A DNA stretch of 64,000 nt from Fonticula alba ATCC 38817 (taxonomy: Eukaryota > Protista > Nucleariida): assembly GCA_000388065.2 (NCBI GenBank), contig KB932204.1, one strand, 5' to 3'. This document shows positions 1 to 62,049 of the stretch, one piece after another (the stretch's first letter is position 1; each line of letters opens with the position of its first letter). Position numbers and translations under genes: made by a program. The notes beneath the pieces were generated by a model. That model saw only the letters and a program-made list of their open reading frames with translations, was not told the origin of the DNA and searched no databases.

Positions 1-552
1 TCCTGCCCGGCGACCAGGTACTACACGGACCATGAGGCGCGGTTTTCCCCGGTGCCGGCGTGCCTCCGGTGTGCTCCCATGTGTGACGCGTGCTCCGGGC
101 TCGGGTCTGAGAAGTGCACCGCCGGCCTGCAGGCCGTCATCAATGCCAGCGTCGGTACGAGAACAGCGCGGCATGCCTGCGGGACATCGACATGTTGGCT
201 TTGGCTGGCCCCTCCCCCCCCCCCTTCACACCCCACTGTCATCGGCGTCCTGACCCTCTCCCTCCCCCCCCTTGGCCCGCCTTGTGTTCTCCTCCTCGAA
301 TGCCCGCCCTGCCGGCCGACAGTGGTCATTATGAGCATCCTTCTCGCGGTCATGGGGACCTTCTTCGTTGGATCCGTGGTGGCCATGATCATCATGCGGC
401 ATCTGAATCAGCAGCGCCGGAAGCGGAAAGCCCCCCCGGCTGCGGAGGCACCCTCCTCGGGAAAGGTTGACTCCGACCGGTCCCGGCGCATGGCACCTCG
501 CAAGGGGCCTTCGGATGAGGCGATCCCCATGGACATGCTGCTGCCTCGATGA
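1..552 (+). CDS. 3' end of furin-like (CxxC) repeat single-pass membrane protein with short cytoplasmic tail and no kinase; exons <1..154, 323..552
   Basis: Frame 1 reads SCPATRYYTDHEARFSPVPACLRCAPMCDACSGLGSEKC (furin-like repeat). A phase-1 intron 155-322 (GTACGA...CGACAG, C-rich) joins ASV-V-VIMSILLAVMGTFFVGSVVAMIIM (TM), followed by basic RRKRK and tail ...DEAIPMDMLLPR*. The 5' part lies outside the window. Confidence 0.85.
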   Translation, partial: SCPATRYYTDHEARFSPVPACLRCAPMCDACSGLGSEKCTAGLQAVINASVGTRTARHACGTSTCWLWLAPPPPPSHPTVIGVLTLSLPPLGPPCVLLLECPPCRPTVVIMSILLAVMGTFFVGSVVAMIIMRHLNQQRRKRKAPPAAEAPSSGKVDSDRSRRMAPRKGPSDEAIPMDMLLPR

Positions 553-3500: not shown

Positions 3501-4318
3501 GCACCCTATCGGAGGCTGCCGCGCTGGCGGGTCGACGAGCTGCGAGGACTTGAAGTGCCCACTTCCGGCTGGACCGGCAGCCAGGCCCGGACGGATGGTG
3601 TTGCTCGCGCTGGGTACCATCCTGGCAGAAGTCATCCATTGGCCTGGCGCGTTCAGGGGAGGGGGGTCCCGGTTTCGGGGGGTCTGTCCGCCTGTGGGGA
3701 ATCTCGGCCATTGGCTTGGCCCTGCAAGGGGGCGCGATTTTGATCATGCTCGGGGGTGTCGGGACCATGTGTGGACGCCGGGTGGGCGGGCCGCCGACCC
3801 ATCCGGGGCAGCGACCTCGCAGGAGTGCGGGGCCTGCAGTCGACCGGCCGAAACGGCAGTTCGCAGGTGGGGCGCGGGCGCGAGGCCCACAGCCATGCTG
3901 ATGGTAAGGTGGCCCCGTGTGAGCACTACTGGTGTCGAATGGTGGGATCCTTCCACCGGGGCCTCTCCAGCGCACACTCCGAGAGCCCACCAATCGGGGC
4001 CCTGTCCGCTCGAAGCACCAGCACCCGACGAGAGAGGCCATGTCTGCCGGCCCGAAAACCGGCGAGGGCCAGGGGGATGCCGGGGGGACGGCTGCCGAAA
4101 AAAAGGCTTGGCACCCTTGGTCTTCGTCGAGTGTCGGTGGTCCGCGTGCAACAACGCAGCCACAAGGCCGCTGACTGCCCCCCCTCTCTCGTCTGCCGAG
4201 ACCCCGTCGTGTGCTGGCCCCGCCCCGGGGCGGCAGGAGGGGGGCCTGCGCAATGCGGGCACACAGAACGCCAGCCAAGGCATGTTGATCGCGGGCACGC
4301 TACAAAAAGAAGGAAGAT

Positions 4319-4391
4319 AGCCCACTGTGGGGCTCGAACCCACGACCCTGGGATTAAGAGTCCCATGCTCTACCAACTGAGCTAAACAGGC
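4319..4391 (-). tRNA. tRNA-Lys (anticodon CTT)
   Basis: Reverse complement GCCTGTTTAGCTCAGTTGGTAGAGCATGGGACTCTTAATCCCAGGGTCGTGGGTTCGAGCCCCACAGTGGGCT folds as a 73-nt cloverleaf. Anticodon loop CTCTTAA, T-loop TTCGAGC, Pol III terminator T5 at 4304-4308. Confidence 0.97.
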
Positions 4392-6836: not shown

Positions 6837-6870
6837 NNNNNNNNNNNNNNNNNNNNNNNNNNNNNNNNNN
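6837..6870. other. Assembly gap (34 N)
   Basis: Run of n in the sequence immediately 5' of the 7TM-RGS gene. Confidence 1.
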
Positions 6871-16865: not shown

Positions 16866-16949
16866 GGGGTAATATACCGCCTCGAGATGGGTCTTTTATT
16901 TGACGGCCCTGGGTGCAATGGAGCTGTGGGGGCCAAAAATGAATGCAGT

Positions 16950-18859: not shown

Positions 18860-19125
18860 TCAGAGCGGCGCTTGGAGCTGGCCCAAGGTGGCGGCCAGTT
18901 CGTCGGCCGTGGGGCGGTCGTCGGGGTTGGTGGACCAGGCCCGGCGGTACGCCTGGCAATAGGGCTCCAGCCAGGAGGCTGACGAGACCACGGGCACCAG
19001 CTTCCGCGGCTCGCCGGTGGACAGGTCCCTGTCTGGGCGCTGGTCGGCCATCACGGCGCGAGGCAGCTCGCTCGACGGCGTGGCTATCGAGCCAGGCAGC
19101 GCACGCGGGCCGATTAGCCAGGGGG

Positions 19126-19170
<45 letters not shown>

Positions 19171-22100
19171 CCCCCAGAGATGCAAANNNNNNNNNNNNNN
19201 NNNNNNNNNNNNNNNNNNNNNNNNNNNNNNNNNNNNNNNNNNNNNNNNNNNNNNNNNNNNNNNNNNNNNNNNNNNNNNNNNNNGGGGGGGGGGGGGGGGG
19301 GGGCCAGTCGGGAGCCACGTACCGATATCGGCCGCCAGGCCGAGGATCTGGCCCGGCGGCAGGGACGAGGGCCAGAGCAGGCTAGACAGGACCCCGGGAT
19401 AGTGCGGCATGACCAGCGCCTGGGCCGGGGCGGCCGAGTACCCAAGCAGCCGGCAGACAAAGGGCGACCCGTCGTTGGCCAGGAGCAGGCCCAAAATGGC
19501 GATCTCCTGGTCGAGGAGCGACTCGAAGTGCGCGCGAGCCGGCGAGTCTGGGTCGACCGCGATGCGGTGGCGGGACGTGGGTTAGGCGAGGGCCGGGGGC
19601 TGAGGGGGGGGGGCGGGGGGGCGGGGCGCGGGGTGTCCACACACCAGCGGGGATCATCTTGACGGCGCCGGCCGACCCGCCAGCCAGCGAAGCCAGATCC
19701 GGTCGGAGCAGGGTGCAGGGCAACACCACCGCCTGGGCCCCGGAGCCCAGGGGCTGCTGCTGGTGTTCCAGGCGGTAATCGGTCTCTGCGCAGAGGAGCA
19801 GGTGCCCGGGGAGGGACATTTCTGGATGCCAGTGGGCCGGCCAGGGGGCGGGGCGGTTAGCCGGGACCGGGGCCTGCAGCCAGCGAGCCATCGGGTCGGG
19901 AGGGGGCAAAAGGCCGAAAAGCAAAGGGAGAAGCATGGTCACGCACCGAGCATGGTATTCATGACGGTCATATCCTCCTGGGGAGTGGTGCATTGCGTTA
20001 GCCCGGGCCAATCGACAGGAGTATGGTATGGGAGGGGGGGGGGGACCGTGTGGGTGCACGCGCGTACCGACTGGCCGAGATGCTCCATGGGGATGGCGTC
20101 AGATTGCTTGAGGGCGCTTGGGCGGCGCTGCCGCCACAGCAGGCAGAGAGCCGCCAGCGCAACCAGGAGCAACAGCAGCAGGCCCAATGGCAGGGCGATG
20201 GCCAAGACAAGCCAGCGCGAATCTGCACGGAGGAGGTTAGACATGGCAGGAGGGGCACAGAGGCGGCAGGCGTCCCGGCCCTCAAGGGGCCGAGGGCTTG
20301 GGGGACATACTTTGCTTGGGACAGCCGCCCGGCGACTCGCAGTGGGGGGTCAGGCAGCCGTCGGGCCCGGGGCCGAGGCACGTGGCACAGGTCATGTCGC
20401 AGGGGGCGCACGCGTCGTCGGTGCCTGTCGAGATGAACCAGCCATCCGGGCAGGTGTCGACGCAGGTGCGCGGCCCGGAGCCGACCGGGGCATGGTCGGT
20501 CGGGTGGCGGTCCGCCAGCCGGACGGCCAGCAGGTCGGGCTGGCATTGCTCACAGTCGTCGGGCGACATGCCACACACCAGGCACCCGGGAGAGGAGCAG
20601 GGCAGACAGCGTCGGCCAGCGGCGTCCGTGTGCCAACCGGCCGGGCAGGTGTCCGTGCCGAGGGGCAAGCATCCCCCGGGGCCGAGCAGCAGGAGCCGGT
20701 CGTCGATGCAGCCGGTGCAGTGGCCGGCCTCGGGCCCGGTGCAGCTGGCGCAGGGGGCCGAGCAGGCCACACACTCATGCTGCCCGGGCGTGAGGGCCTC
20801 CCGTTGGAAGAAGCCCTCCGGACAGGAGGCCAGGCACCCGGTGCCCGGCAAGAGGGCCGATCCCGGCCGGCAGCCGAGGCAGTGCCACGGCTGAGGCCCC
20901 CCCTGGCAGGAGGTGCAGTCCCGATGGCAGGGTGCACAGCGCGCCGAGGGCGGCGAAGAGAGGTCGGGGAATTCGTCGGGCTCGCATGCGGCCACACAGG
21001 TGCCCGGGTGGCGCCCGAGGAGCATGCCGTCCGGGCATTGGACACAGTGGTCGGCGGTGCCCTCGCAATGCTGGCATCCCGGGGCACAGGGGAGGCAGCT
21101 CTTCCCCGAGGCCAGGTAGCCCCGGCCGCAGGTGGCCAGGCAGCCGTGTGCCGGATGCAGGGCCAGATCCCCGGCACACTGGGAGCATTGCTGGCCGGCG
21201 GGGCCGGCGCAGGCGAGGCAGTAGGGCCCGCAGGGCAGGCAGGTGCCCCCGTCGGGGAAGGTCCGCTCGGGGCAGGCCCCCATGCAGGCGCCCTCCCAGA
21301 GGTTGGGCCGGGGCATTGGGCAGGCGGAGCATTGGCCGGCTGTCGGGCCGTGGCACTCGGCACAGGAGGTGTCGCAGGGGACGCACGCGCCGGCCAGCGG
21401 GGTGCTTGTTGGCGGGCAGCTGTCCAGACAGCGCGCTTGGTGGAAGACATGCGACCGGGGACACAGGTGGCATTGGTGGGCCTCGGGCCCGGCGCACGAC
21501 AGGCAGGACTCGTGGCAGGGAATGCACCGGCCGCCCTGCTGGAAGAAGCCCAAGGCCGGGCAGGCCGGGCGGCAGTACCCGCGATCCAGGACCCGGGCCG
21601 GGGGGCAGGCGGTGCAGGCGTTCGACCGGTGCGCGGAGCACTCGGCACACGAGCCATGGCAAGGGAGACAGGCATCGCCGCTGGCGGCCGGGAACATGGC
21701 CTCCGGACAGGCCTCGACACAGGTGTGGCTGCCGGGCAGGAGCAGCCAGCCGGGCATGCACACCAGGCAGAGGGCCGGGTCGTCCGGGCTGCATGCGGCG
21801 CAGGCGGCATCGTCGCAGGCGCACGCCGGGCAGGGGTCCGGCAGGCAGGCATTGTCCTGCTGAAGCGCCCAGCCGGCCGGGCAGGAGAGGCAATCCGTTG
21901 ACAGGGGCCCGGAGCAGGTGGCGCAGCGCGGGGCGCATGCGTCACAGGCGGCCCCCGCGGCATGGGTCCCCGGCGGGCAGGCGCCCACACAGGTGTCCTG
22001 GTGGAGCATGAGCCCCGGGGCGCAGGTCAAGCACGCGCCAGGGCCGGGGGCGCCGCAGGTGGCGCACGATGCGTGGCACTGGAGGCACTGGGTGCCGGAG

Positions 22101-24200
22101 TCATCGAGCTGGAGGCCGGGGCCACAGGCCCGGCAGAGGGCCCCGGCCTGGTCGGTGACGCAGGACAGGCAGCCGGCGTCGGCGCACGGGGCACACTGCT
22201 TGGCATCGGAGGACGAGATGCCGGTGCCGTCGGGGCAGGAGCGCACGCACGCGCCGGCCGGGGTCCGCAGCCAGCCGGCCGCACAGGCCAGGCAGTCGGC
22301 GGCCGTGGCGCCGAGGCACCGGTCGCATGCCGGGTCGCAGGGCCGACAGGCCCCGGGCAGGCCGGCCGGCAGGAAGCGATTTCCCGAGCACGCGGTGCAT
22401 TGGCCGGGGCTGGGCCCGAGGCAGGAGGCACAGGAGGCGGCGCATGCGAGGCACTGTCGGCCATCGGGCCCGGGCCCGAAGCCGGGCCCGCACTCGGCCA
22501 CGCAGATGCCAGCCTGGAGGAGCTGCCCATCGGGGCAGGTGGCACACAGCCCCGGCCACATGGCCGAGCAGGTGGCGCAGCTGCCATGGCAAGCCTCGCA
22601 CCGGGGCGGGGACACCCCGAGCCCGGTGGAGTCGTTGGCCACCGGCAGGAGGCCCGGCTGGCAGGTGCAGGCCGACGGGCCGACCTGCATGCCGGCCGGG
22701 CAGGCACAATTGTCGGCCCCCGGGCCGGGCTCCGGGACGGCGTGCTCCACACACTCACACCGATCGGTCAGGGGGCTGATGAAGCGCCCGGCCCCGAGGC
22801 AGGTGCACTGGCCGCTGGCCCGGTCGAAGGGGGCATCCGAGGGACACCAGTGCTGGGCCTGGTCGGCTCGGGCCATGACCGTGAGACTGGCCTGCCCGTC
22901 GGGCGAGTGCTCCAGCACCACCACTTCCACATGGTCATCTTGATTGACATCGGCCAGGAAGATGGTCGGCGGGGGGGTGCCGTCGGTGGACATGGTGGCT
23001 GTGGCGCGGCCCGGGCGGATGACCACGCGACGGAAGGCCGACCGCCGGCTGTCCTGAGCCAGGTAGGCCACAATGCGCCCGGTGTGCCGATACACCAGGA
23101 CGAAGTCCGCATTGTTGTCGCCATCCAGGTCATGCGTCTGGAGGTCGACATCCTCATTGATGGGGTCACTTTCGAGGTTGACCATGTCGCAGCCGTAGTC
23201 ATGGCGATGGCCCGGCTGGGTGGTGGCCGTGGCAGGGCCATGGCCGGGGCGGGCCGGCGTGGCCGGGACCCGGGTCATGGGGCTGGCAAAGGCGCCGGCC
23301 GCGGCAGCCTGGCCGGGGTGGACCAGGCGCTGGCAGTGATGCTGCATGATGCACATGAAGTCCAGCAGGGTGATGCTATTGGGCTGGCCATCGGCCCGGA
23401 GGAGGGCCACCTCGTTGTAGCTGGCGTGGTTGGTCGCCACGAAGACGACATTGGTGATGTGCCGGTCGGAGGGGTCCAACAGCCAGGCGCAAGACCAATT
23501 GATTGCGACAAAGAAAATGGCCGGCTGGCGGACCGGGTGCCAAGGGATCAGGTCTTGGATGGACTCCACATGCAGGAGGTCCGAGGTGCCGGAAACCGAG
23601 CCCAACATGGTGCTGTGCAGCCTCCGGGGCAGGGCCCCGGGACCCGGTCGGGGCAGTTCAACCACCACCCGCTGGCACTGGCCATCGGACAGGTAGCTGT
23701 CGGCCAGGATGCCAGGAGCCAGGAGGATGACATCGCGCCAGTCATCGGGCGAGGTGGCATCCGGCGCCACGCGCACCAGTCGCAGGATGCTGGGAGCCAT
23801 GCCCCGGGCAAGGCGGGCCGGCTGGAGGAACACCTCCTCCAGGGGGTACGGCAATGGCAGGGCCTCCACCTGGCAATGGGCCATCAGGGCCGAGCTGGGG
23901 TCGAGCAGGGACACCGACTGGATGCTGGCCAATTGCACGTGCGATTGGACGGCGATCGGCTGGCCGGCCAAAGTGCACACCCGGGTCGGGGTCGGAGGAT
24001 CAATGCCCACACTGGGCGGGGGAGGGCCCCGGGCCAGGGTCAAATGCACCGGCAGGGCATTGCCCTTGTGGCTGATGGCTTGCCAGGAGAGCCCGGCCGG
24101 CGGGGTGGCGGATGTGGCGGCCGGCGCCCAAGGCAGCCCGGCCGGAGTCCTTGGCCCGGGGGCGCTCGTGTCCGTCGGGGGGGTGGATCGGAGGAGCGAG

Positions 24201-24232
<32 letters not shown>

Positions 24233-27200
24233 GGCATGGGCCAGGTCCCCGAACCAGGGCATCCGGATGATCATCGACGGGCGGGAGACGTCCTCGATGG
24301 TGAGGGTGTCCCAGGTGAGGTCCGCTCCGAGGCCCAGGTGGGAGGGATCCGGGGACATGCTGCTGGCAGTAGTGATGCTCCGGCGGGGCGACCGGCCGAT
24401 GGAAAGGCCTCCCGTGAAGAGGCCCGGCGAGTCGGGGGAAGGGGCATGTGCCGGTCCCGGCGGACTGGCGCTCTGGTCCGGCATGTGGCCCGGGTCCTCG
24501 GGCGACGGCTCGGCGAGGCTGTGGATGAATGGGGGATCGAAGTTGGGCCCGCGGCAGTAGCGGCGCATGGAGTCCATGGCCTCATTCAGGGGAATGGCTC
24601 GCGGCTCGGCTGGGCGGGCATTGGGAAGCAGCTGCCCCGCGGACACGGTCCAATCTTGGCGTTGGCCATCCTCCAGCCGGGTGTGAGCCAGGTGCAGGGA
24701 ATACCCGGCAGCCATGACGAGCCCGCGATCGCCGGCCGACGAGTGGACAACCCGCAGACGCGACACCTGAAGGGGCTCCATGGCGGCCCAGGCCGGGTGA
24801 AGGGTCACACGTCGGGCAATGGTCCAGACGTCCCCCGGGCGGGGGGTGTCACACTGGCGCCCGGCCACCAGCGGGGCATCCGGCCGGTCGCACTGGCCGG
24901 CACACCGGCCGTCCTCCGTCAGCACCAGCCCCGGCTGGCAGTCGATGCATTGGGCCCCCTGGCAAAGGCGACACCCGGGGTCCGGGCAGCCGGGGCAGGA
25001 TGACTGCTGGATGGATGGGGCTGGGGCTTCCTGGCCCGGCGAGGGGGCCCGGGAAGAGGAGGCCCCGGGGGTGTCGGCCTTGGCGGGCCGGGCACGGGTG
25101 GCACTTGCATTCGCGGGGGAAGAGACACCGGATGCCGGGTCACAGGGCGAGCAGAGGTCCGCCGACGAGTGTCCCGGGGTCGAGACGCCCGGGATGCACT
25201 CGCACAGGTCCTCCACCAGCAGGCCGGTGGCCCGATGCAGGCACCCGGGCGCGGGGACTTCGGCGCCCGAGGCGTCCTCCGAGCAGGGGGGCCCCGGATG
25301 CCAGTCGTCGTGTGGTGTGCACCGGCCCAGGAGGCCGCAGCCGCAGCCATTCTCCGCGTCGCTCTGGTGGAAGAGGGCCCCGATGAAGTTGCTCCGGCCG
25401 ATGAGGGCCACCTGCGAGCGGAGGGTCTGGTGAATGTCCAGCACGGCCAGCACCACCGGCTGGCCGATCCACGGGGCGAAGGACACCCGCGGGACCAGGG
25501 GCTGGTGTTGGACATGGACCGCATGGGTGGCTGCAGGCTCGGCGCCCTGGTCGAAGAGCAGATCCAGCCGGTGCAGCCAGTTGCCGGTCCAAAGGAAGAT
25601 CCGCGCCTGGCCCGGGCCCATGGCCAGGGGATCGGACACGGCGGCCAGGTGCCCGGTGCCCGAGGGCCCCGGGTCTCGGCCCAGGTCCAGTAGGGTGAGC
25701 AGGGGCACCGGGGCCGGGAAGTCCGGCCGAGCGGTGGACCCGATGGCCACATTGCGCAGGAGGAAGAGCACGGCCCCGGTGTGCGAGTCCGGGCTATAGG
25801 GAACAAGCAGGAAGCCCGGGCGCCGATCGGCCGGGCCGGCCATCACCGGGATAAGCTGGCCACAGGGCAGGTCCGGGTGGAGGACCTCCGCCGGGAGGGC
25901 CGGCAAGCTCTCCCGGTCATAGGCCTGGAAGGGGAACCAGAGGAGCTGGCACCGGGCCGCCGGGTCGAAGGGACTGCCAGTGCCACTTCGCTCGGGCGGC
26001 AAATGGCTCAACACCACCATGGTTTCAATGCCAAAGTCATTGTCCACGGCGGCCCAATGGACCGAGACAAGGGTGTCGTTGGTGACTTGGCGGTGGAGGA
26101 AGGCGGGCCCACGGTACACGTGCACGAGGGCCTGGGGCCCCGGGTCGCCGGCCACACGGCCGACAGTGATGTGATCGTGGTTGAGCGCCGACCCTTCTTG
26201 GATGCGGTGGCAGCCGCTGGCCCGGTCGGGCTCTGTGCAATGCTTCAGCAGGCTGCCCTCCACGAAGTAGGGGATCTTCCGGTTGTACTTGGCCAGCGGC
26301 CGCGAGGAGCGACCCCTGGCGGGGGTCTCCGCGATTTGGAAGCCACCATGCAGGGAGCTGCGCCGGAAGGACACCTCGCTGACATGGAGCAGGCCCTGGA
26401 AGAGGGACAGCCCCTCGGAGGTGGGCATGAGGGAAAACCGCTGACGGATGCGGATATGTCCCTCGAGGAGATATTGCTGTGTGTAGGTGGGGCTGTCGGT
26501 CCAGACGGGCAGAACCGTGTCAAAGACCTTGGTGGAGCTGGCGAAGCCCCCGGCCGGGGTGGCCTCGTAGAAGGCCTGAGTGCCGGGGGGCACGCGGGTG
26601 ACCAGCACCGCGGGCGTGACCGGCGAGGCACAAGCCCCGCCCTGCAGCAGCATGGCCCCATGGCAGGACCGGCACTCGTTGGGCCCGGGTCCGATGCAGG
26701 AGGCACACGAAGTGTGGCACGGTTGGCACAGTCCTCCTGTGCGCCAGGAGGCAGGGCGTTGTACGGAGGCAGGGGGGGGGGGGGCATTCAGTGCGATTGT
26801 CAGTGCGCGTGCGATGGCATTTGAAGTCCATTGAATCATTGCACACCGGGCGCATCGTCAATCGGGCAGCCCGGGGCGCGGAGGGATCATTGCCCGAGGG
26901 CAGGAGCGACGAAGGTCGGTCAGGGGGCAGGTCAAGGACACACGGCGTGCGTGTGAATGGGAGGGGACAGGAAGAGGGACCCGGGGCCGGCAGCCCGGGC
27001 GGGGGAGGGACTTTCCAGGCGCACCGGTCGAGGGGAAGTGGCCGGCGCGGCAAAACTCGCATGGGGCAAAATCGGTCCCGGGATCGGCGTTGGGGCTCAG
27101 GCAATGGCACGTCGGCGGGTGGAAGAAGCCTCCGGATGCGGGGCGGCATTCGGCGTGAGGCCCACAAAGGCAGGAGGGCGAGGCGTGCACCTGCGACAGG

Positions 27201-45736: not shown

Positions 45737-47045
45737 GGTTCGCAGGGATTACTCGACGGCTGGGATCCGGGATGTTCCTCGGGAAGCATCGTGGGCACTT
45801 CCTTTGCGGCACGTGATGTCACCTTTCAGTAGCCAATGCTCGGGCCGGCGCCCTGATCTGGACATCGAGAGCTATGCCTCTCCGCCGCGTGCCCTGATGC
45901 TTCGGCATGGCTGTGTTTCAAGTTTGTAACTCACCCATCGATTTGGTTAATGGGTGTCTCGGGGATACTGCCCCAGTCCGGCGGAAGGAACATGCATGGG
46001 TGCCGATTTTCCAGCCCCGGCGCCGCCCCCTAGTGCCGATGGACCACGCCATGTTCGAAGGCCAGGGAAAGAGCTGGTGGCATGTCACAATCGCCCTGGG
46101 CATGAGGTGTTCTCTGCATTCTCAAGGAGCGTGCAATAAAGGGCTTTTATATTCCCGGCCCCCCTCCCCTTAATATACGCTTCGACTCTGGACGTTCTGC
46201 TTCCGTCGTCCTTCTCGGTCCGGGGAAAGCGTGGTCCTCGCTCTGGGCCGCGGTCGGGCGAATTCTTCCAAGCGTGCCTTTGCCCCGATGATGCAACCTT
46301 TCATGGCTTCGCCCCGATTCGATCGTCTACCAGCGACTCGGGACATCACCGCACACATCCAGTGCACCGGCCGACTCCGACCAATGCGTCCGCCCACACG
46401 GCACATCCGCTGGCCGTGTGGCATGTTCCGGGTGTCCCCACGCCTGGCGGTGGTGGTTGCCGGCGTTTGCCCGGGACTTCGGGCCGAAGTGGCTTCCGGC
46501 GATGTGACAGTGTGTCACTGATGGTGTCTCATTTCCCCCGGCCAAGTTCCTCCCCCCCCCCCGCCCCGTGAAACGGCCACCGTCCTCCGGGCCCCTGAGC
46601 TTGGTTCGTCGAGCCCACGCGCTGGGTGTCCCCCCCCCCCTCCACCCGGGCCACGGAGGCCGAGTTCTTGTTGCCTGCAGAAACATTCGCACGCGAGGCC
46701 GACTCCAATGTCCCGGCCCGCCCCCCTCCCCCGAGACTCAGCCGCTTGAGAGGGTGTGATTGTGGATCGCGGCCAACGTTGCTGGGCACCACCCACCGGC
46801 GCCTTGTCGTGCGAGGGGGTGGGCGGGAGGTGCTTCTTTAGGGGGAGATCCTCCCAGGGTCCGCACTTACGCGCCTTTAGACTTCCTTCCCTTCCCTTCC
46901 CTCCCCCCCCCCCCCCCCCCCCCCCCCCGTTTCTCGCTTCTCGCCATTTCCCCTCCTGCCGACCGGTTCGCACCGGGGAGAAAAGAGGACCCGAGGGCGC
47001 ACCTTTCGGCGGATGAGCAGCCCGCCACTCACGGCCCATCGGCCC

Positions 47046-50000
47046 ATGACAGCCATGCAGCCCTTGGTCCTGCTACTTTCGCTGGCCTCGCTGCACCTGC
47101 TGACTCTATTCGTTGGTCCTTCTCGAGGCCAGGATCTCTTCTTGCACGCGGCTAGCTACCCCGTCCTGCAGGGGCTTGCGCCGGTGTCCTTTGCCACGGC
47201 GGCCAACCAGGGCTCAGTGGCCGGGGTGTCGACGAGTGCCGAGTTTTTCCACATCAAAGCACAGGAGGACGGTGTGGCCGGCCTTTCGGAGGTTCGGTGG
47301 GGTCTCTTCTTTGATGGGCACAAGTCTTCCATTTCACGGTTACGCTCTGGCGATCCCTGGCCGGGACAAGTCATGATGCTCCCTGTGGGGGATTCCCTGG
47401 AGCCCGTGCTGGTGGAACACACCTCGAGCCATGTGGGTCTGCTCTCCTCGATGAATGCCTTTCCCCTGCCCGGGGCGAGTGCTGAGTTGCTGGCTGGCAT
47501 TGCCGTTAGCGATGAATCTGTCGAAGTGCTTGGTGTGTCCAAACAGGCCGCCGGTTCGGAGGGCAGTGTTTTTATGGGCAATCTGACGCCAGCCAGCCTG
47601 AACTTGAAGCAGGACCCTGTCATCGCCACCGCCGGCCTGGTTGTGGCGGCCCCCGGCATCGGGCGGACCTTCTTCCTGGGCAATGGCGATCGCCTCTTGG
47701 CCGCCAACTGGCAACGGAACCCCGTGGTGGACTCTCTCAATGTCTCTTCGGATATTCGCGATCTGGCGGCCACGCGTTTCTTTTCCACCGCGGCCGACTG
47801 CCCTGATGGCTTGGATGTGGTTGTCCTTCTTGAGAGCGGGACAGTGCTTGTGTATCAGTGTTATGATCTTTGGCCGGATACGTCCTTCACCTCGGTGGCA
47901 TCCCCGGTCCGGCCGTCTCCGGCGGAAGGTCGGATCTTGGCTCCGCCGGGCCGGGCCATGGCCGACAGCACGGCGCCCTTCTACCTGGTTCTTGCCGAGG
48001 CGGTGGATGCTCGTGACCGATTGTGGATGGCCGTGGCACATGCCGGGGAATTCTCCTGGCGTCGGGTCATCCTGCCGCCGGGCTTCGCCGATGACCTGGA
48101 GGACTTGCAGCTAGTGCGCTTGAAAATCACCGCCACCGGTTCTGGCGAGTGGACCCTCGTGTCGGGAAACACCGCGCTATTTCCGCCGGAGGTCTTTGGC
48201 TGCGGCACCGATCACACCATCGTCTGCGAAGATGGCACCCCTCCCATCAGCTCATCGCGCGGGTGGTCCTGTGCTCTTGGGCATGCGGCGTCGCCTTTCG
48301 TGTCGCCTGCCTTCCTGTGTGCGGGCTGTGCTGATGGCTGGTATTTGGACCGGCCCACCGGTATGGCCATGGCTATTTGCCAGGGTTTTTTTTTTTTCTG
48401 GCTCTCTTTCCTCACCGATGTTGATGTCATCGAGTGGGTCTTTTTTTTTCCCCCATGTCCTTGCTGCTCCTGACGCTTCTGCTTTGCACACGCGCACACC
48501 CCGTGCCCTCTTATTCATGCCCCTCTCTTTTGCTGGCCAGATGGGGCACCCTTCTCCCAGCCGGATCATGTGTGTCGGCCCTGTCCCTATCCCCATTGTC
48601 GGACTTGCAGTGCCGATGGCTGCCTCGTGTGCGAGGACTCCTTTTTCCCGGAAAATAGCGGCCAATATGGGCAGACCCTCTGCGTGGAGACCTGCTCAGT
48701 GGGCTTCACCGAGATCGCCGGCACCTGTCAACCACGCGGCCTGTCGCCGACACCGTTGAGCATCACCGTTCCCCTGGGCGAAAGTTTGCCGGGCTTGCCG
48801 TCGGGCGTGACGGTGGTCGCCATCGGGCCCACCTGGCTGTCGGTGGATGGCAACTCCTCGCGCCCGATCATTCCACGAAGCCCGGGGCTGGGTTCCCCCC
48901 CGCCCGGGGTGCTTCTCTTTGCCTCCTCGCGAAGCGTCTACTTCCTTCCGGCCAGTGCCATTGGTCAGTTGACGAAGCCCCCACTTCAGCCGGTGTCCCT
49001 CCTTGGCTCCTCTTTAAATGCTGATTTTCGGTCTTTTGCCGAGGCCGGGCCGTTCCTCCACAACGGCCGATTGAGCCACTTGCTATTAATGTGCACTGAC
49101 GGGGGATTCCTCTTCCTTGCGTGGCTCAATTGCGAGCCCGGCGAGGCCGCCATGTGCGTCTCCGAGCCTGCCTATGCCGAGGGAACCTTCATTTCCGGCT
49201 GCATCGAGGTCAGACGTCTGGATGCCGGGCGTGCTCTCGTCCTGACATCGGATCAGGCGCAGTTTGTCCTTGAAGCCGATCCCAGCACCAAGACTGTGCT
49301 GACCGAGGTCGTCCAAGGGGTGGGCTTTGTCAATCTCTTCGCGCCGGGGGAGACGTCGGCCGGCCGTGCGAATCCCGCCCTCGGGGACTGGCTACTGTGG
49401 AGCACCTTCTCGGGCCGGGCCACGGTCAGCCCATGGTCTCTGCTGGGAAGCGACTCACGCAAGCAGGCCATCACCGGTGCCCTCCTGCCGGGGATGCCGG
49501 ATGAGGGCAGCCTCTTCGCGCCAGTCCTTCTCCCTCGAGGGGCGGGAGCCTGGCCGGAGTTAATTCTGACCAAGGCTCAGGGCCCCGAGTGGCTGGTTCT
49601 CCAGGTGCCCGGCGACATGCTGCCAGCTGGCCGGTCCATCGACCTGGCATACAGCCGCCATGTTTTGGGGGTCTTCCCCCAGGGGCTGGCCAATCCCGTG
49701 GGCGGCCGGCTGGATGCCCTGTTCCAGGGGGTTGCCCTGCCAAATGGCGGCCCGGAGTATCCGAGTGTGCTGCTGGTCTTGGCGCGGGCTTTCCTGGGGG
49801 CTTCGCTGCTCCGTTGCCCGGATGGCGTGGCCGGTCGGTGTGCCCTTCAGCCGGCGGTGTTTGTCAGCCTGCCGGCCGAGCTGCGCCTTGCGTCCGGCAC
49901 GGGGCCCTGGCTGCCGGTCATCGCCCAGGCCGGGCCGGGGCCATCCATCGAGTCGGCACAGGCGCCACCGCGGGGGACGATCTTGACCTTGCTGCTCCTT

Positions 50001-53000
50001 TCCCCCAGCACCGGGCAGCTGGTCTTCTCGCTGGATAACAGTTGCCCGGTGGGCACGTATGGCGATGTGTGTCGTGCGTGCGATGGGACCTGCCTCGGAT
50101 GCAGTGGCCCGGGCCCGGGAGCGTGTACATCCTGCTCGGCGGGGCAGCTGCTCCATGGTGGCGCATGTGTGGGCGTCTGCCCGGGTGGCATGTGGCCCGA
50201 TGTGGGTGCCGGTGTGTGCCGGGCTTGCCCGGTGGGCTGTCTGGCGTGCCAGTCGCCGACCCATTGCACGGCGTGCGGTGGGGCTTTCTTCCGAGCCGAT
50301 AACTCCTGCTGGCCCTGCCATGGGTCGTGTGCCGAATGTGCCAATGGGTCCAGCTGTTTGTCCTGCAAAGTGGGACTCATCTTCCTGGAGGTGGATGAGC
50401 TGGTGGACTCGCTGTGCGGAAGTACCTGCCCGCCTGGGGAGTTTGTCGGGAGCGACCGGTGCACCGAGTGCGCCGCCAGTTGCGAGCTGTGTGTCGGCAG
50501 TGCGACCGCGTGTCAGGTGTGTGCGAGGGGTTTCCGCTGGGCCAGCAAGCCGGCACCCGGGGCCCCTGGCGCATGCGTGCCCTGTAGCCAAGGGTGTCAG
50601 TCGTGCACGGTGGACGGGTGTTTGGCCTGCGAGCCGGCTCTCCTCCTGGCACCAGGGGCCGATGCCTGTGTGCCTGCCTGTCCGCCGGGGAGCTGGGCCA
50701 ATGGCGAGTCCTGCCAGCCATGCGACCTCAGTTGCCGCACATGCGTCGGCGGGGAGAGCACCGAGTGCACTGGCTGCGATGTCGGGCTGGAGCTTCTCGA
50801 CAGTGCCCCCGGGGTGGGGACCTGTGTGTCGGGCTGCGGTGATGGCCAGTTCCGGGATCCGGTTTCCGGCCAGTGTGTGCCCTGTGCTCCGGCCTGCGCC
50901 ACATGCAATGGCCCGACGGACCGGGATTGCTGGCGGTGCAAGGATGCCCTGTTGCAGGATGATGGCTGTGTCCAGCATTGTGCCACCCGGCATGTGGCCG
51001 TCAATGGGCGGTGCCTGCCTTGCCATGCTTCGTGTGCGGCATGCACCGGTGTCCGAAGCACCGAGTGCACCACCTGCCTGGGGGGTCTACTGGCGCTGGC
51101 GCCCGGGCCATTGCCCGTGCGCTGTGTGGAGGCCTGCCCGGTGGGGTATAACACGTCGGATTCCGGCTGCACCGCCTGTCGGGACCATTGTGCCACTTGC
51201 CCGAGCGCTCCCGGCACATGTGCGCAGTGTGAGCGTGGGTGGTTTCTCGACCAGGCGGCCTGTGTGGACGCTTGCCCGGGTGGCACGTTCTCCATGGGGA
51301 GCCTGTGCGCCGGCTGCCATGAGACCTGTGCCACTTGCTTCGGGCTGGAGGCCGACCAGTGTCTCGCCTGTGGTGCGAGTGCCCCGTTGGCGTGGGGCAA
51401 TCGGTGTTATGCGGCCTGTCCGGGTGGCACCTACCAGAGCGGCCTCCAGTGCCTGCCCTGCCATGGCACATGTGCCATGTGCTCCGGGCCCGGGGCCAAT
51501 GAATGCACCGGTTGCCATGGCAGCGGCGTCAGGCTCAATGGGTCCTGCCTGGCTGGCTGCCCGAGGGGCTACTTTCCGCAGGGCGACCTGTGTGTCGAGT
51601 GCCATGCTTCCTGCGGCGCGTGCGATGGTCCGGGGCATTGCACGGACTGCCTGCTGGGGCACATGCTCCAGCCGGATGGGGCCTGTGTGGCCGACTGCCC
51701 GGTTGGGTGGCTTGGCTGTCGGCAATCGAAGCGGTGTGTCGCCTGCCCGCCGGGGTGCCTGGCGTGCGAGGCCTCCGGGTCGACGTGCGAGCCCCTCTGC
51801 ACGGTGTGCGATCCGGAGCACGTGCTTTCTGCGGGTGCGTGTCTTTCCTTCTGCCCGGTCGGGGAGTTCCAGCCCCCGGGGTCGGGCTTCTGTCGGCCAT
51901 GCGCGGGGACCTGCTCGAGTTGCTTCGAGGCCGCGGACCGGTGCACCGGTTGCCATGTGGGGCTCCTCCATCCGGCCGAGGGCACTTGCGCCGGGGCCTG
52001 CTCGGGCTCCCTGGTTCCGGTGAAGGGGGTGTGTCTTGGCTGCTTCGCCGGGTGCGAGGCATGCGAGGCGCCTGCGGACCAGCCGGAGTGCGAGCTTCAT
52101 GTTGATGGGTCGTTGGCTTGCCCGGATGTTGCCACCTGCCGGCGCTGCGAGCCGGGGCTCCTTCTTTTGGGGGTCGATCTTTGTGTGGGCTCCTGCCCGG
52201 TGGGCTTCTTCCCGGAGGCGGATGGCGCCGTGTCGCCGGCCTGCCTGCCCTGCCATGTGAGCTGTCGCGCGGGCTGCGTCGGTCCGGCTGCCTCGGACTG
52301 CCAGCAGCCCCCCGGGTCGACCGGGTCTCGCGTTGGCCTGGTCGTGGGGCTTTCCGTGGGCTTGTTGCTTTTGGCCATCCTGCTTGTGGTGGCGGTGGTG
52401 ATCTGGGTGTATCGGCGCCGTGGTGCGGCGACATCAAGGAAGGCCCCCGACACGGAGGACGCCACCATGCTGAACACCATCGTGGAGCTGGCCCTGCCCG
52501 GGACGATCCTGGTCGACATGGCGGTGGACTTTGTCCCGGAGCCCGGGGAGGCGATCGGCGCCGGGAGCCAGGCCAGCGTGGTGGCCGCGCGGGCCATCGG
52601 AGCCGGTATCTCCGCTCGGCTGGGCTGCCCGGAGGTGGTGGCCATCAAGGTGCTGAAGGCCGAGGGCATGAAGCCCACCCATGTGTCCATGTTCCAGAAT
52701 GAGGTTGCCTTGATGTGGCTGCTGCGGGATCATGGCACCATCGTGCGACTGTATGGCTACAGCCAAAGTCCGCCGGCCATCGTGATGGAGCGCTTCGAGG
52801 GGGACTTGAGCACGTTGCTGCATTCGGAGGTTGTCCTGTCGCCGGTGCAGCTGGCGGACATTTGCCGGCAATGGGCCACGGGGCTGGAGGCGATGCATGC
52901 CCATGGGGTTGCTCATTGTGACCTGAAGTCGGGCAATGTATTTGTCAGCCCGGTGGCCGGTTCGTGGCGGGCAGCCCTCGGGGACTTGGGGACGTCGAAG

Positions 53001-53396
53001 AACCTGAACACCGATCGATCCTCGGCCCTCATCACCACCGTGCCGAAGTTGAATGCCATGAGTGCGCGGTACGCGGCGCCGGAGCTGCTGGCGGCCTTCC
53101 GCCGGGGGGTGTCCCTGGAGCCGGGGCTATTCTTCCCGGCGGACATCTATGCCGGGGCGATCTTGCTCAATGAGTGCCTCACTCGAACTGTCCCCTGGGC
53201 CGGGATGAGCCTGCAGCATATTGCGGATGCCGTGCAGACGGACCAGCGGCCGGTGTGTGTGCATTCGTCTCATGCTGCCGAGGGGCTGGTCCAGGCTGCT
53301 TGGCAGACGGATCCCGAGCGGCGCCCCCTGGCGGCCACCTTCCGCCAGCAATGCGCCGCGCTCTTTGTGGCCGCCGGCGGTCTGAATGGCTCCTGA
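47046..53396 (+). CDS. Receptor-like TKL Ser/Thr kinase with large ectodomain and >15 furin-like repeats; exons 47046..48360, 48541..53396 (2056 aa)
   Basis: Signal peptide MTAMQPLVLLLSLASLHLLTLFVGPSRG. One phase-1 intron 48361-48540 (GTATGG...GGCCAG). CxxC array, TM VGLVVGLSVGLLLLAILLVVAVVIWVY. Complete kinase: GAGSQASV, VAIK, NEVALM, HCDLKSGN (52914-52937), DLG (52983-52991), YAAPE, DIYA, WQTDPERRP. Confidence 0.93.
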
Positions 53397-55942: not shown

Positions 55943-55943
<1 letters not shown>

Positions 55944-55973: not shown

Positions 55974-55975
<2 letters not shown>

Positions 55976-59552: not shown

Positions 59553-59619
59553 NNNNNNNNNNNNNNNNNNNNNNNNNNNNNNNNNNNNNNNNNNNNNNNN
59601 NNNNNNNNNNNNNNNNNNN
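59553..59619. other. Assembly gap (67 N) next to a G-rich tract
   Basis: Run of n. Confidence 1.
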
Positions 59620-59642
59620 GGGAAACAAAAAGGCAGGGCGAC

Positions 59643-62049
59643 TCAGTCGAGCTCCCGGGGGAGCGGCTTCATGGGCACGTCGCCTGGGCAGGAGCAGCGG
59701 AAGAACAAGGTGGGGGCGGTGAAAGAAGGAAGGTCAGTCAAGGGTGAGGGCCGAAGGGACCGGGTCCGGGGGAGGCAGGTGGAAGGGCTGCGCACCGCTG
59801 GGGGATTTACGCCGACGGTACAGATAGATGCATAGGCCGACGCTGGCCAGCAGCAGGATGGCCAGGGGAATGCCCACGGCCAGGCCGATGGTCAGGCCGG
59901 GATGGCCGGACGGGCCGGACGAGGAGCCGACACAATCATCGACGCCGGGTCCGACACACTCGGAGCAGTCCCGGTGGCAGGCCCCGCACGCAGGGACCGA
60001 GCCATTGGCGTCGGGGAAAAAGCCGGCCGGGCAGGCGTCCAGGCACCGGGCGCCCTGGTGCAGAAGCAGGCCGGGCTTGCACTTGTCGCAGGTGGCGATC
60101 TCCGGGCACAGGAGCAAGCCACTCGGGGCCGTTCGGCACACGGGGGCCGGGCTGGCCGGTGTGCACCGGTCGCAGCCCTCCGGGCAGGGCAGGCAAATGC
60201 GCTCCAGGCCCGGAGCCACTTCGGTCGGGAACTCCACCCGGGCGAAGTGCATCTCGGGGCAGGCATCCAGGCAGAGCCCGGAGTCGACCTGCAACCAGCG
60301 GTCGGAGCCCGCCGGGCAGGAGGTGCAGAAGTCCGCGGCCGTGGCGCAAGTCCGGCAGCCCTGGTCGCAGGGGAGACAGGCACCGGCCCCGGGGGGGAGG
60401 TACTCGCCAGTGGGGCAGGCACTGGCGCAGAGGCCCTGCCCGGTCAGCACCAGGGCATCGGCGCAGCGGGTGCACTCGGTGGCCGAGGTGCACTCGGCGC
60501 AGCCCTCGCCGGGGCATGGGTAGCAAGTGCGGGAGGCCCATTCGGACCAGGTATCCTCGTATTGCCCGGCCGGGCAGTCCATCATGCAGGCGCCCTCGAC
60601 GGTGTGGGCGAGGTCGTTTTCGCAATTATGACAGTCATTCGGGCCGCCGGCCGAGCATGAAAAGCACCCGGCATGACAGGGCAGGCAGGTGCCGGCCTGG
60701 GGGAAGAGCCGGGCCGGGCAGGTCTTCCGACATTCGCCATCCACCACCAGGGGGTAGTCTGACAGACAGGCGAGACACTGCGCGGGCATCGGGCCGAAGC
60801 ACGAGGCACAGCCCTCGGAGCAGACCAGGCACTGGGGCCCCTGGGGGAGGGAGCCCGCCGGGCAGGAGGCCACGCAGCTCAGGCGATTTGGGGCCAGGAG
60901 CCAGCCCGGCGCGCAGATGTCGCACGTGGGCTTGCTGGCGTAGGGGTCGTGGCAGGAGAGACAGTGCTCCGGGCAGGGGAGGCACCGGTCGAAGTGGGCC
61001 AGTGTGCCGGTCGGGCAGCTGGGCACACATGCCACCAGCTGGCTGCCCGGCGTGGGCAGGGAGAACAACGCCGTCGGGCAGCGGTTTTGGAAGCAATCTC
61101 CCGGGCCCGGGCCCTGGCACTCGAGGCAGCCGGGATGGCAGGGCAGGCATCGGCCGGCCTGGATGAAGTGCCGCGGGGGGCAATTGGCCAGGCACTGGCC
61201 TTCGACCAGATATTCCGAGGAGGTCTTGCAGCTGAGGCACTGGTCGTGCCCCGGGCCGTGGCAGGTGAGACAGGAGCTACTGCAGTCGAGGCAGGTGGCC
61301 GAGGCGGCCGAATCGTCGCCATCGTCGATGGGGTACGTCCGAATGGGGCAGTCATGCTGGCAGGTGCCGGGCGGGCCCGGCCGCAGGCCTTCCTGGCAGG
61401 AGGAACAGTCATCCGGGTTGGGCCCGGTGCAGGTGACGCACTGCGGGGGGCAATGCCGGCAGGCGGCATCCCCGGGCAGGGCGAAGGTGCCGTCCGGGCA
61501 GGCGACCTCGCAGGTGCCCTGCCAGTGGAGCAGCCATCCGGCCATGCAAGAGAAGCACCGGGTGCCCTGATTGGGGTCCAGGCTGCATGTGTGGCAGCCG
61601 GCCGGGCAGGCGGCACAGGTGCCGGTCGTGCCGGGGGAAGGGGCCCGGCCATCGTGCCAGCTGAAGCCCGGGGCGCAGGCGGTGCACTGGTCGGGGGCCT
61701 CGGCGCAGAGCTCGCACTTGGCGTCGCAGGCCGTGCACCGGCCGGCCGTGGCCATGTCCAGCACCTGCCCCGGGGGGCAGAGCCGCGTACAGAGAGACCG
61801 CTGGCCGGGGACCGGAGACAGGAACCCCAGCTCGGGCTGGCACCGGTCGCAAGCGTCGGCCTCGGAGCAGGCCTCGCAGGAGGTGTGGCAAGGTGCACAT
61901 TCGCCGGCGGAGGCATCGAAGAAGTGTCCAGTGGGACAGGCCTCCGCGGGGGCATTGGCGAGTTGACGCCCGGCGAGGCTCCCGGCCGCCCGGGCAAGGG
62001 CCGGCACCGCGAGCAACAGCAAGAACACCGCCCGGGTGATGGGGCGCAT
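59643..62049 (-). CDS. Kinase-less furin-like repeat (~13 repeats) single-pass surface protein; exons 62049..59796, 59683..59643 (764 aa)
   Basis: ATG in GCCACCATG context and signal peptide MRPITRAVFLLLLAVPALARA. Continuous CxxC array, TM LTIGLAVGIPLAILLLASVGLCIYLY, RRRK. A phase-1 intron 59684-59795 (GTGCGC...CTGAC...CCCAG) gives the tail SPSGDVPMKPLPRELD*. Confidence 0.92.

What the first reader, a model, noticed from the sequence alone, without database searches (positions are those of the whole stretch)
1..62049. Four related Cys-rich receptors, two with a kinase and two without: candidate receptor plus decoy/co-receptor system
Seen: four genes (1-552, 18860-28552, 47046-53396, 59643-62049) share the furin-like repeat array, TM and basic stop-transfer layout. 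Two continue into a TKL kinase and two end in short tails of roughly 20-45 aa. Known: paired kinase and kinase-less receptors with related ectodomains (plant RLK/RLP pairs) form recognition complexes, and the signal peptide/CxxC array/TM/short tail layout also recalls Giardia variant surface proteins. Inference: this is an independently evolved modular cell-surface recognition system (prey, kin or aggregation sensing) in an amoeboid lineage.
Basis: partly seen in the sequence, partly recalled or inferred. Interest (0 to 1): 0.75.

Follow-up and report, generated by a model that had tools for sequence, protein, structure and literature searches.

The report
Kinase-less cousins of Fonticula receptor kinases
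The four genes are real members of a very large family of cysteine-rich surface receptors found in the amoeba Fonticula alba. The two without a kinase probably belong to an old, conserved kinase-less branch of that family, but nothing shows that the four work together as a receptor-plus-decoy unit.

Summary
The window (Fonticula alba, contig end) holds four genes with furin-like Cys-rich repeats, one TM helix and a basic stop-transfer. G2 and G3 continue into a RAF-like (TKL) kinase. G1 and G4 stop about 21 and 52 residues after the membrane.

The gap at 19187-19283 lies inside G2's kinase. It hides about 115 profile positions, including the catalytic core, and both flanks are intron. The gap at 59553-59619 lies 23 nt past G4's stop codon.

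The four are not a module. They are scattered members of a roughly 100-locus family, separated by tRNA genes and a helicase gene. Making G4 the sister of its neighbour G3 is rejected (p-AU 6e-8).

The new point is that G4 groups, with weak support, with a well-supported clade of head-less, kinase-less "stalk-only" proteins on other contigs. These keep all ~102 stalk cysteines and share a C-terminal motif (acidic-x-aliphatic-P/S-M-x-x-aliphatic). G1 carries the same motif.

A decoy role is unlikely because they have no ligand-binding head. An accessory or co-receptor role is possible but untested.

Other reports of this scan already describe the kinase-bearing family on other DNA of this genome.

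The parts
1..552 (+). G1. This is the 3' part of a small kinase-less gene whose ATG lies 476-491 nt before the window. Exon 1 ends at 154, an in-frame intron spans 155-322, and exon 2 runs 323-552. The TM is at 322-396. The tail is about 52 aa and ends in the motif D-E-A-I-P-M-D-M-L.
   Evidence: Its 24 cysteines align 1:1 with the last 24 stalk cysteines of relatives.
18860..28552 (-). G2. A giant receptor kinase of about 3000 aa. It has a signal peptide, FG-GAP repeats, non-Cys modules, a furin-like stalk, a TM exon and a kinase split into small exons.
20068..20220 (-). G2 TM exon. It ends in the juxtamembrane motif S-D-A-I-P-M-E-H-L, which is followed directly by a GT donor.
19187..19283 (.). 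Assembly gap inside G2's kinase. About 115 kinase profile positions, including the catalytic loop and the activation segment, are missing. Poly-C intron sequence lies on both sides.
47013..53396 (+). G3. A receptor kinase (P0074, 2067 aa) with a head of about 940 aa, a furin-like stalk, a TM at 52329-52412 and a kinase at about 52548-53342. The kinase motifs VAIK, HCD, DLG and APE are intact, and the catalytic loop is of the non-RD type.
59643..62049 (-). G4. A stalk-only, kinase-less protein (H696_03225, 764 aa). The signal peptide is followed directly by a stalk with 102 cysteines. The TM is at 59818-59898. An intron spans 59684-59795, and a final mini-exon at 59643-59683 encodes D-V-P-M-K-P-L-P-R-E-L-D followed by the stop.
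59553..59619 (.). Assembly gap 23 nt downstream of G4's stop codon, in the 3' UTR. No kinase-like sequence lies beyond it.
62075..62269 (.). Assembly gap 26 nt upstream of G4's start codon.

Best explanation
What it is:
- The window samples four dispersed members of Fonticula alba's lineage-specific family of cysteine-rich ('furin-stalk') single-pass receptors.
- G3 is a standard crown-group receptor kinase: head, stalk with about 102 cysteines, family cassette, TM, and a RAF-like non-RD kinase.
- G2 is a giant FG-GAP-headed member of a different, deeper subfamily. The middle of its kinase is hidden in an assembly gap.
- G4 belongs, probably, to an old kinase-less 'stalk-only' branch: signal peptide, complete stalk, TM, and a tail of about 21 residues. 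G1 does too, less surely. The core members of this branch lie on four other contigs.
- These proteins keep every stalk cysteine and a shared C-terminal motif. The same motif occurs just inside the membrane in some deep-branching kinase receptors, including G2, where an intron follows it.

How it most likely works (inferred, about 35%):
- The stalk-only proteins cannot bind what the heads bind and cannot signal by themselves.
- They act as accessory subunits that pack side by side with receptor kinases. Contact would be through the rigid stalk and the shared tandem GxxxG-type TM motif.
- They would offer the same juxtamembrane motif to a common cytoplasmic partner, tuning signalling up or down.
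- They are not a dedicated partner of the neighbouring kinase genes.
For: The family and its size:
- G4's cassette plus TM matches about 100 loci in the genome (147 matches). A G3 kinase query gives 133 matches.
- Of the 40 best cassette loci, 37 run on into the juxtamembrane segment or kinase, 2 end in short tails and 1 is cut by a contig end.

The kinase-less state is real:
- No kinase piece lies elsewhere in the window.
- G4's annotated product ends at the mini-exon.
- The stop codon precedes the gap.

Selection on the kinase-less proteins:
- 102 of 102 G4 cysteines are matched, at only 26-36% non-Cys identity.
- The tails of G4, G1, P0003, P0005, P0191 and L019 all carry acidic-x-aliphatic-P/S-M-x-x-aliphatic within about 12 residues of the C-terminus.
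- The same motif is seen in the kinase receptors G2, P0168 and P0171.

Phylogeny on about 689 stalk columns:
- P0003, P0191, P0005 and P0190 form a clade at 98/98. G4 joins it at 88/48.
- All six kinase-less proteins, including G1, fall on one side of a branch in the best tree, at 53/65.
- In the earlier data set, before P0190 and P0191 were added, holding the four kinase-less proteins then available (G4, G1, P0003, P0005) together as one clade was not rejected (p-AU 0.36).
- G4 plus G3 as sisters is rejected (p-AU 6e-8).

TM motif: the tandem small-xxx-small motif is shared by G3, G4 and most members.
Against: - No expression, localisation or interaction data were reachable. No transcript-derived proteins turned up and no paper covers these genes.
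- G4's link to the stalk-only clade is weak, and it was not recovered under a site-mixture model.
- G1's position is unstable, because it fills only 24% of the columns.
- G1's TM lacks the GxxxG-type motif.
- Kinase-less loci lie anywhere from 2 kb to about 400 kb from the nearest kinase receptor, so position gives no sign of pairing.
- The census is incomplete.
Confidence: 0.6

Rival explanations
1. The stalk-only proteins are autonomous surface proteins, such as a coat, an adhesion or spacer molecule, or a glycocalyx component. They merely share ancestry with the receptor stalk, as Giardia VSPs and the Entamoeba Igl lectin subunit do, and they do not act on the kinases.
For: - They have a complete signal peptide, a rigid Cys-rich rod, a TM and a very short tail, which is the layout of VSP-like surface proteins.
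- Several lie far from any kinase receptor.
- F. alba is reported to lack obvious cadherins and integrins (PMC9097593), so other adhesion molecules are needed.
Against: - The conserved cytoplasmic motif is shared with the juxtamembrane region of kinase receptors.
- The TM motif is shared with the kinase receptors.
- Neither is explained by a pure coat role.
Confidence: 0.3
2. The four genes form a local recognition module in which the kinase-less members are ligand decoys or dedicated co-receptors of the neighbouring kinase members.
For: - All four lie within 62 kb and share the repeat, TM and stop-transfer layout.
- Within a first, limited comparison set, G1's best match is G4.
Against: - G4 and G1 have no head domain, so they cannot compete for a head-bound ligand.
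- G4 plus G3 as sisters is rejected.
- About 25 kinase receptors elsewhere in the genome are as close or closer to G4 than G3 is.
- G2 lacks the cassette loop that the other three share.
- The genes are convergent and separated by tRNA genes and a helicase gene.
Confidence: 0.07
3. The kinase-less genes are leftovers of birth-and-death evolution. On this view they are truncated copies on their way to becoming pseudogenes.
For: - Truncated copies are common in comparable families, for example Entamoeba TMKB1, where only 6 of 35 copies are full length (PMC2880585).
- In L036 the motif lies out of frame after the tail intron.
- G1 keeps only the last quarter of the stalk.
Against: - G4 is no more than about 46% identical to any relative, yet it has an intact 2.3-kb ORF, a signal peptide, every cysteine, and a spliced mini-exon that restores the conserved motif.
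- The core clade has at least four intact members on different contigs.
Confidence: 0.08
4. The missing kinase is an artefact. The kinase exons of G4 or G1 would be hidden in assembly gaps or reached by splicing that was not seen.
For: - Many annotated 'kinase-less' large family members are simply cut by gaps just after the start of the kinase: P0075, P0077, P0082, P0093, P0122 and P0123.
- A gap lies 23 nt past G4's stop codon.
Against: - An in-frame stop follows the conserved terminal motif in G4, G1, P0003, P0005 and P0191 at the same relative place.
- No kinase piece lies within 3.7 kb beyond G4, or anywhere downstream of G1.
- There is no gap within 6 kb of G1's end.
Confidence: 0.05

Closest known systems
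[quoted passage not shown]
   Same: - An amoeba with a large family built as signal peptide, CXXC-rich ectodomain, one TM and a TKL-type kinase.
- Related cysteine-rich surface proteins and 3'-truncated copies lack the kinase.
- Over-expression of a truncated TMK disturbs proliferation (PMC2880585).
   Different: - The lineage is unrelated (Amoebozoa versus a sister of fungi). Homology of the kinases was not tested here.
- The Fonticula stalk is a fixed array of about 102 cysteines with its own membrane-proximal cassette. That cassette reached 60 bits or more only in Fonticula proteins among those retrieved.
- The kinase-less forms are TM-anchored with a conserved C-terminal motif. From memory, Igl is GPI-anchored.
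Plant receptor-like kinase / receptor-like protein (RLK/RLP) pairs
   Same: Homologous ectodomains occur with and without a cytoplasmic kinase. The kinase-less forms have a short tail and, in plants, signal through kinase partners. This rests on general knowledge and was not tested here.
   Different: - The plant ectodomains are LRR or LysM, not furin-like.
- Plant RLPs keep the ligand-binding ectodomain, whereas the Fonticula stalk-only proteins lack the heads.
- No partner is known.
Giardia variant-specific surface proteins (Pfam PF03302)
   Same: They have CXXC-rich repeats, one TM and a very short tail. Pfam VSP matches G3 at 58 bits and G2 at 47 bits.
   Different: - The match covers only about 80 of 397 profile positions, and for G4 it is below the cut-off (26.8 against 31.4 bits).
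- The tails do not end in the VSP signature CRGKA.
- There is no sign of one-at-a-time expression.
Furin-like cysteine-rich repeats of animal proteins (PCSK5 C-terminal region, R-spondin Fu repeats, EGFR/insulin-receptor CR domains)
   Same: The repeat type is the same. The best non-Fonticula sequence hits are PCSK5-like proteins at 26-31% identity. The only solved structures matched are R-spondin-1 Fu repeats, at E about 1e-5.
   Different: - There is no protease, L-domain or tyrosine kinase.
- The kinase is closest to RAF (TKL) among solved structures.
- Fonticula has no tyrosine kinases (PMC4342544).
Fonticula 'propeller-headed' receptor-kinase arrays described by other reports of this scan
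   Same: It is the same family. G3 falls in its crown clade, and G2 is an FG-GAP-headed member.
   Different: Those reports deal with kinase-bearing members and their variable heads. The head-less, kinase-less clade and its tail motif are what this window adds.

Membership tests
Fonticula furin-stalk receptor family | Colinear cysteine-rich stalk (about 102 Cys) ending in the membrane-proximal cassette with an extra Cys loop | tested here: met
   - G4: 102 of 102 Cys matched to kinase members.
- G1: 24 of 24 Cys of the last quarter matched.
- The cassette is aligned in G1, G3 and G4.
- G2 lacks the extra loop and matches 93% of the Cys.
Fonticula furin-stalk receptor family | Single TM followed by a basic stop-transfer | tested here: met
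   Seen in all four genes. The tandem small-xxx-small TM motif is present in G3 and G4 but not in G1 or G2.
Fonticula furin-stalk receptor family (kinase-bearing type) | Juxtamembrane D-A-T-M-L-N-T type motif followed by a TKL kinase | tested here: not met
   - G3: met (470 bits to the family kinase profile).
- G2: both ends of the kinase are present and the middle is lost in the gap.
- G1 and G4: no kinase.
G1 and G4 are therefore filed as kinase-less relatives, not as receptor kinases.
Stalk-only kinase-less clade (P0003, P0005, P0190, P0191) | Signal peptide running directly into the stalk, no head, and a tail of about 20 aa ending in acidic-x-aliphatic-P/S-M-x-x-aliphatic | tested here: met
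   G4 meets every feature. G1 has the motif but a truncated stalk and a longer tail.
Stalk-only kinase-less clade | Phylogenetic placement inside or beside the clade | tested here: inconclusive
   - The core clade has 98/98 support, and G4 joins it at 88/48.
- With G1 added, all six fall on one side of a branch at 53/65.
- In the earlier set (G4, G1, P0003, P0005 only), one clade of the four was not rejected, p-AU 0.36.
- The grouping is not recovered under the C20 mixture quick tree.
Giardia VSP (PF03302) | Score over the Pfam gathering cut-off across the profile, and a CRGKA C-terminus | tested here: not met
   The matches are partial (profile positions 72-153 of 397). G4 scores below the cut-off. 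The tails end differently.
EGFR / insulin-receptor type RTK | Receptor L domains flanking the furin-like region, and a tyrosine kinase | tested here: not met
   - No Recep_L_domain hit.
- The kinase is nearest to RAF.
- No tyrosine kinases are reported in Fonticula (PMC4342544).
Plant RLK/RLP system | A kinase-less member that physically partners with a kinase member | not testable with these tools
   Interaction or genetic data are needed. Only the with-kinase / without-kinase split is shown here.
Entamoeba TMK family | Common descent of the kinase and ectodomain with EhTMKs | not tested
   Only the likeness in architecture is taken from PMC2880585.

The most novel reading that the evidence does not exclude
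Fonticula has independently evolved a two-tier surface recognition system. About 100 head-bearing receptor kinases provide specificity. A small conserved set of head-less, kinase-less stalk proteins serves as shared co-receptors or regulators. These would dock through the stalk and TM and through a common juxtamembrane motif. That would be a functional analogue of plant RLK/RLP or BAK1-type partnerships in a sister lineage of fungi, possibly used in sensing prey or kin during collective feeding and aggregation.
Probability: 0.15. Interest if true: 0.7.

Novelty: new variant of a known kind. Interest (0 to 1): 0.45.

Why it matters
Fonticula alba is the aggregating amoeba closest to fungi. It is reported to lack tyrosine kinases (PMC4342544) and obvious cadherins or integrins (PMC9097593). 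How it senses prey and neighbours is therefore an open question.

A family of about 100 receptor kinases is the obvious candidate, and my searches found no paper that describes it.

Showing that the family has a conserved kinase-less, head-less branch gives a concrete set of six to ten genes. It also gives a short C-terminal motif to mutate or tag. Both can be used to ask whether these receptors work in complexes.

There is also a practical warning. Most 'kinase-less' annotations among the large family members are truncations caused by assembly gaps, so counts taken from the public annotation overstate this class.

Tried and rejected
- An exact-sequence look-up of G4's gene context returned nothing, because records of the window's own genome are withheld.
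- Pfam scans of 20 long ORFs downstream of G1 and G4 found no kinase and nothing else of use. Scans of 20 intervening ORFs found only an SF1 helicase exon and a sub-threshold RGS hit.
- Pfam could not see G2's small kinase exons. A family-specific profile could.
- A codon-usage gene map trained on the receptor genes was biased towards Cys-rich sequence and was dropped.
- The tree built on the 89-column cassette alone was unresolved.
- The careful site-mixture tree did not finish, and the rerun was killed for memory. The reported supports therefore come from LG+G4 on reduced sets.
- The AU test of G1 plus G2 did not finish.
The census therefore rests on 40 loci plus coordinate tables. The candidate stalk-only loci C6:2445064-2447388 and C4:1021531-1023615 could not be read.
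- No telomere repeat lies at the contig end, so 'subtelomeric' cannot be claimed.
- No expression data were found in the papers.
Exons were examined by reference or inside scripts only, so G1's and G2's annotated products were not identified.
- The large representative-protein search and structure prediction were not used, because no claim here rests on them.
Full report
**Where the window lies**

The window is 66% G+C eukaryotic DNA with short GT..AG introns. It is G000:C4:3004796-3068795, about 5 kb from the end of a 3.07-Mb contig of a 31.3-Mb genome. Database names identify the organism as Fonticula alba. G4 is H696_03225, and G3 is a 'TKL protein kinase' of 2067 aa.

**The four genes**

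- G1 starts before the window, with an ATG at L003:9509 or 9524. It encodes a signal peptide, about four furin-like repeats with 24 Cys, then an in-frame 168-nt intron (window 155-322). A TM follows (322-396), then a tail of about 52 residues that stops at 550-552.
- G2 (28552..18860, minus strand) has a signal peptide, FG-GAP repeats (Pfam), long non-Cys modules and a furin/VSP-type array inside a 2185-aa ORF. A separate TM exon lies at 20068-20220, followed by small kinase exons.
- G3 (47013..53396) has a head of about 940 aa with no Pfam match, the stalk, a TM and a Pkinase domain (E 2e-28). The VAIK, HCD, DLG and APE motifs are intact. Among solved structures the kinase is closest to RAF.
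- G4 (62049..59643, minus strand) runs from its signal peptide straight into a stalk of 102 cysteines, then a TM. The annotated product P0001 uses a 112-nt intron (59795-59684) and an 11-codon last exon.

**The gaps**

- At 19187-19283, the sequence on one side is a GT donor followed by poly-C. On the other side it is poly-C followed by an acceptor.
- I built a 320-position profile from 43 annotated family kinases. It matches G2 at positions 12-69 and 74-140 before the gap and at 256-313 after it. Nothing matches in between.
- The gap therefore hides at least one exon holding the catalytic loop, the DLG segment and the APE segment. The two sides cannot be read through in frame, and G2's catalytic competence is unknown.
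- The gap at 59553-59619 starts 23 nt after G4's TGA, so G4's coding sequence is complete.
- The gap at 6837-6870 touches none of the four genes.
- A fourth gap, 62075-62269, lies just upstream of G4's ATG.

**Are G1 and G4 truly kinase-less?**

- The family kinase profile was run with all filters off against every six-frame ORF of 15 aa or more. It found G3, the three G2 pieces and nothing else.
- tblastn with two family kinases against 3.7 kb beyond G4 and 4.5 kb beyond G1 was blank. Pfam on the long ORFs there was also blank.
- The strongest argument is comparative. Read through its tail intron, G4 gives an unrelated peptide. Spliced, it ends in D-V-P-M-K-P-L-P-R-E-L-D.
- That ending matches the ends of other complete kinase-less proteins: K-D-A-M-P-M-N-S-L-H-G in P0003, K-E-S-I-S-M-S-V-I-R-D in P0005 and K-E-S-L-P-M-D-T-I-Q-D in P0191. 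It also matches D-E-A-I-P-M-D-M-L-L-P-R in G1 and V-D-P-L-E-M-R-V-L-A in locus L019.
- All of these stop within a few residues of the motif.

**The family and a census**

- G4's last 168 residues match about 100 loci across the genome. G3's kinase gives 133 matches.
- I fetched the 40 best cassette loci. Of these, 37 continue directly into the conserved juxtamembrane segment (E-D-A-T-M-L-N-T type) and kinase, or into its first residues before an N run. Two (L019 and L036) end in short tails, and one is cut by a contig end.
- The public annotation shows many more large 'hypothetical EGF-like' proteins without a kinase. At least six of them (P0075, P0077, P0082, P0093, P0122, P0123) contain the start of the kinase and are simply cut at gaps.
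- Real kinase-less members are therefore a minority, roughly 10 in about 100.
- Within the proteins retrieved, the family-specific cassette, with an extra Cys loop before the last furin unit, scores 60 bits or more only in Fonticula proteins. The best foreign score is 43 bits, for proprotein-convertase-type proteins.

**Relationships**

- G4's 102 ectodomain cysteines align one for one with those of kinase receptors, while non-Cys identity is only 26-36%. G1's 24 cysteines align with the last 24.
- G4 is therefore the whole stalk without head or kinase, and G1 is its last quarter.
- About 25 kinase receptors on other contigs match G4 as well as or better than its neighbour G3 does.
- In trees on about 689 stalk columns (LG+G4, ultrafast bootstrap / SH-aLRT), G3 lies in a crown clade at 100/99.
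- The stalk-only proteins P0003 (contig 10), P0191 (contig 8), P0005 (contig 3) and P0190 (contig 15) form a clade at 98/98. G4 joins it at 88/48.
- With G1 added, all six kinase-less proteins fall on one side of a branch, but weakly, at 53/65.
- In the earlier data set, before P0190 and P0191 were retrieved, one clade holding the four kinase-less proteins then available (G4, G1, P0003, P0005) was not rejected (p-AU 0.36).
- G4 as sister of G3 is rejected (lnL difference 117, p-AU 6e-8).
- Caveats: a quick tree under a site-mixture model did not recover G4 with the others, and G1 moves between analyses.

**Origin of the tail motif**

- The motif is not peculiar to the kinase-less proteins. G2 has S-D-A-I-P-M-E-H-L right after its stop-transfer, followed at once by an intron and then by the E-D-x-T-x-M-N-T segment.
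- P0168 and P0171, deep-branching kinase receptors, show the same order.
- In G4, and probably in L036 and P0190, an intron lies just before the motif.
- The kinase-less proteins therefore correspond to a receptor that ends after its first juxtamembrane motif. Whether the kinase was lost once or added later cannot be told without a root.

**Genomic setting**

- tRNA genes lie between G1 and G2 (4318-4392, 16267-16338, 16793-16865 and 16948-17023).
- An SF1 helicase exon lies between G2 and G3 (36790-37662; AAA_12 E 2e-55).
- G1/G2 and G3/G4 are each convergent.
- Elsewhere, stalk-only loci lie from 2 kb (P0003, inside the contig-10 array) to about 400 kb (C4:1.02 Mb) from the nearest kinase receptor.
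- Being near a kinase receptor is what tandem growth of a family would produce, so it is not evidence of functional pairing.

**Interpretation**

Shown:
- The four genes exist.
- Two of them truly lack a kinase.
- The kinase-less state belongs to a conserved branch kept under selection, judged by the cysteines, the signal peptide and the tail motif.
- The four window genes are not a related quartet.

Inferred:
- A decoy role is unlikely without a head.
- The shared stalk, the shared tandem small-xxx-small TM motif in G3, G4 and most members and the shared juxtamembrane motif make lateral association with receptor kinases plausible. I put an accessory role at about 35% and an autonomous surface role at about 30%.

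**Comparison with known systems**

- The nearest documented parallel is the Entamoeba TMK family, with its kinase-less CXXC relatives and truncated copies (PMC2880585).
- Plant RLK/RLP pairs are a functional analogy only.
- My searches found no paper that describes the Fonticula family. Suga et al. report no tyrosine kinases in Fonticula (PMC4342544).
- Other reports of this scan already describe the kinase-bearing arrays on other pieces of this genome. One unfollowed note mentions another kinase-less FG-GAP/furin receptor.

Noticed in passing
window 62075-62269: A fourth assembly gap of 195 N lies 26 nt upstream of G4's start codon. It is not listed with the finding. G4's promoter and 5' UTR are therefore unread.
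   Followed up: partly
window 4318-4392, 16267-16338, 16793-16865, 16948-17023: Four tRNA genes (Lys-CTT, Asp-GTC, Glu-CTC, Lys-CTT) lie between G1 and G2. Three of them sit within 760 bp.
   Followed up: no
window 36790-37662 (+): An exon of an SF1 helicase (Pfam AAA_12 E 2e-55, AAA_11 E 1e-17; UPF1/SEN1-like) lies between G2 and G3.
   Followed up: no
window 19140-19186 and 19284-19300; also L036:~900-935 and L026: Long poly-C runs inside introns border assembly gaps in several family genes. The gaps seem to be caused by homopolymer C tracts, and they repeatedly fall within or just after the juxtamembrane/kinase part of the gene.
   Followed up: partly
genome-wide (P0075, P0077, P0082, P0093, P0122, P0123): Public models named 'hypothetical protein / EGF-like domain-containing' hold the first residues of the kinase and are then cut at gaps. 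As a result the annotation overstates the number of kinase-less family members.
   Followed up: yes
P0190 (H696_05957, contig 15): The annotated C-terminus seems to read through the tail intron, giving about 70 unrelated residues after the stop-transfer. The true end is probably a mini-exon carrying the shared motif, but the DNA could not be fetched.
   Followed up: no
L036:~600-935 (C5:262 kb): This is a kinase-less locus with a tail intron like G4's. After the acceptor, the M-P-M-A-V motif lies one base out of frame. This may be a frameshifted copy or a sequencing error beside a 1.6-kb N run.
   Followed up: partly
coordinates; L002: Family loci pile up near contig ends: all of contig 10, the first 400 kb of contig 5, both ends of contigs 9 and 11, and the right ends of contigs 3, 4, 6 and 8. 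The end of contig 4 carries no telomere repeat, so a subtelomeric location is not shown.
   Followed up: partly
C6:2445064-2447388 and C4:1021531-1023615: Two further loci look stalk-only. They match P0003 at 36-39% over nearly its full length, have open frames of about 960-1020 aa, and have no family-kinase match nearby.
   Followed up: no
window 8363-9334 (+): An ORF gives a weak RGS-domain hit (E 0.0098, below the Pfam cut-off).
   Followed up: no
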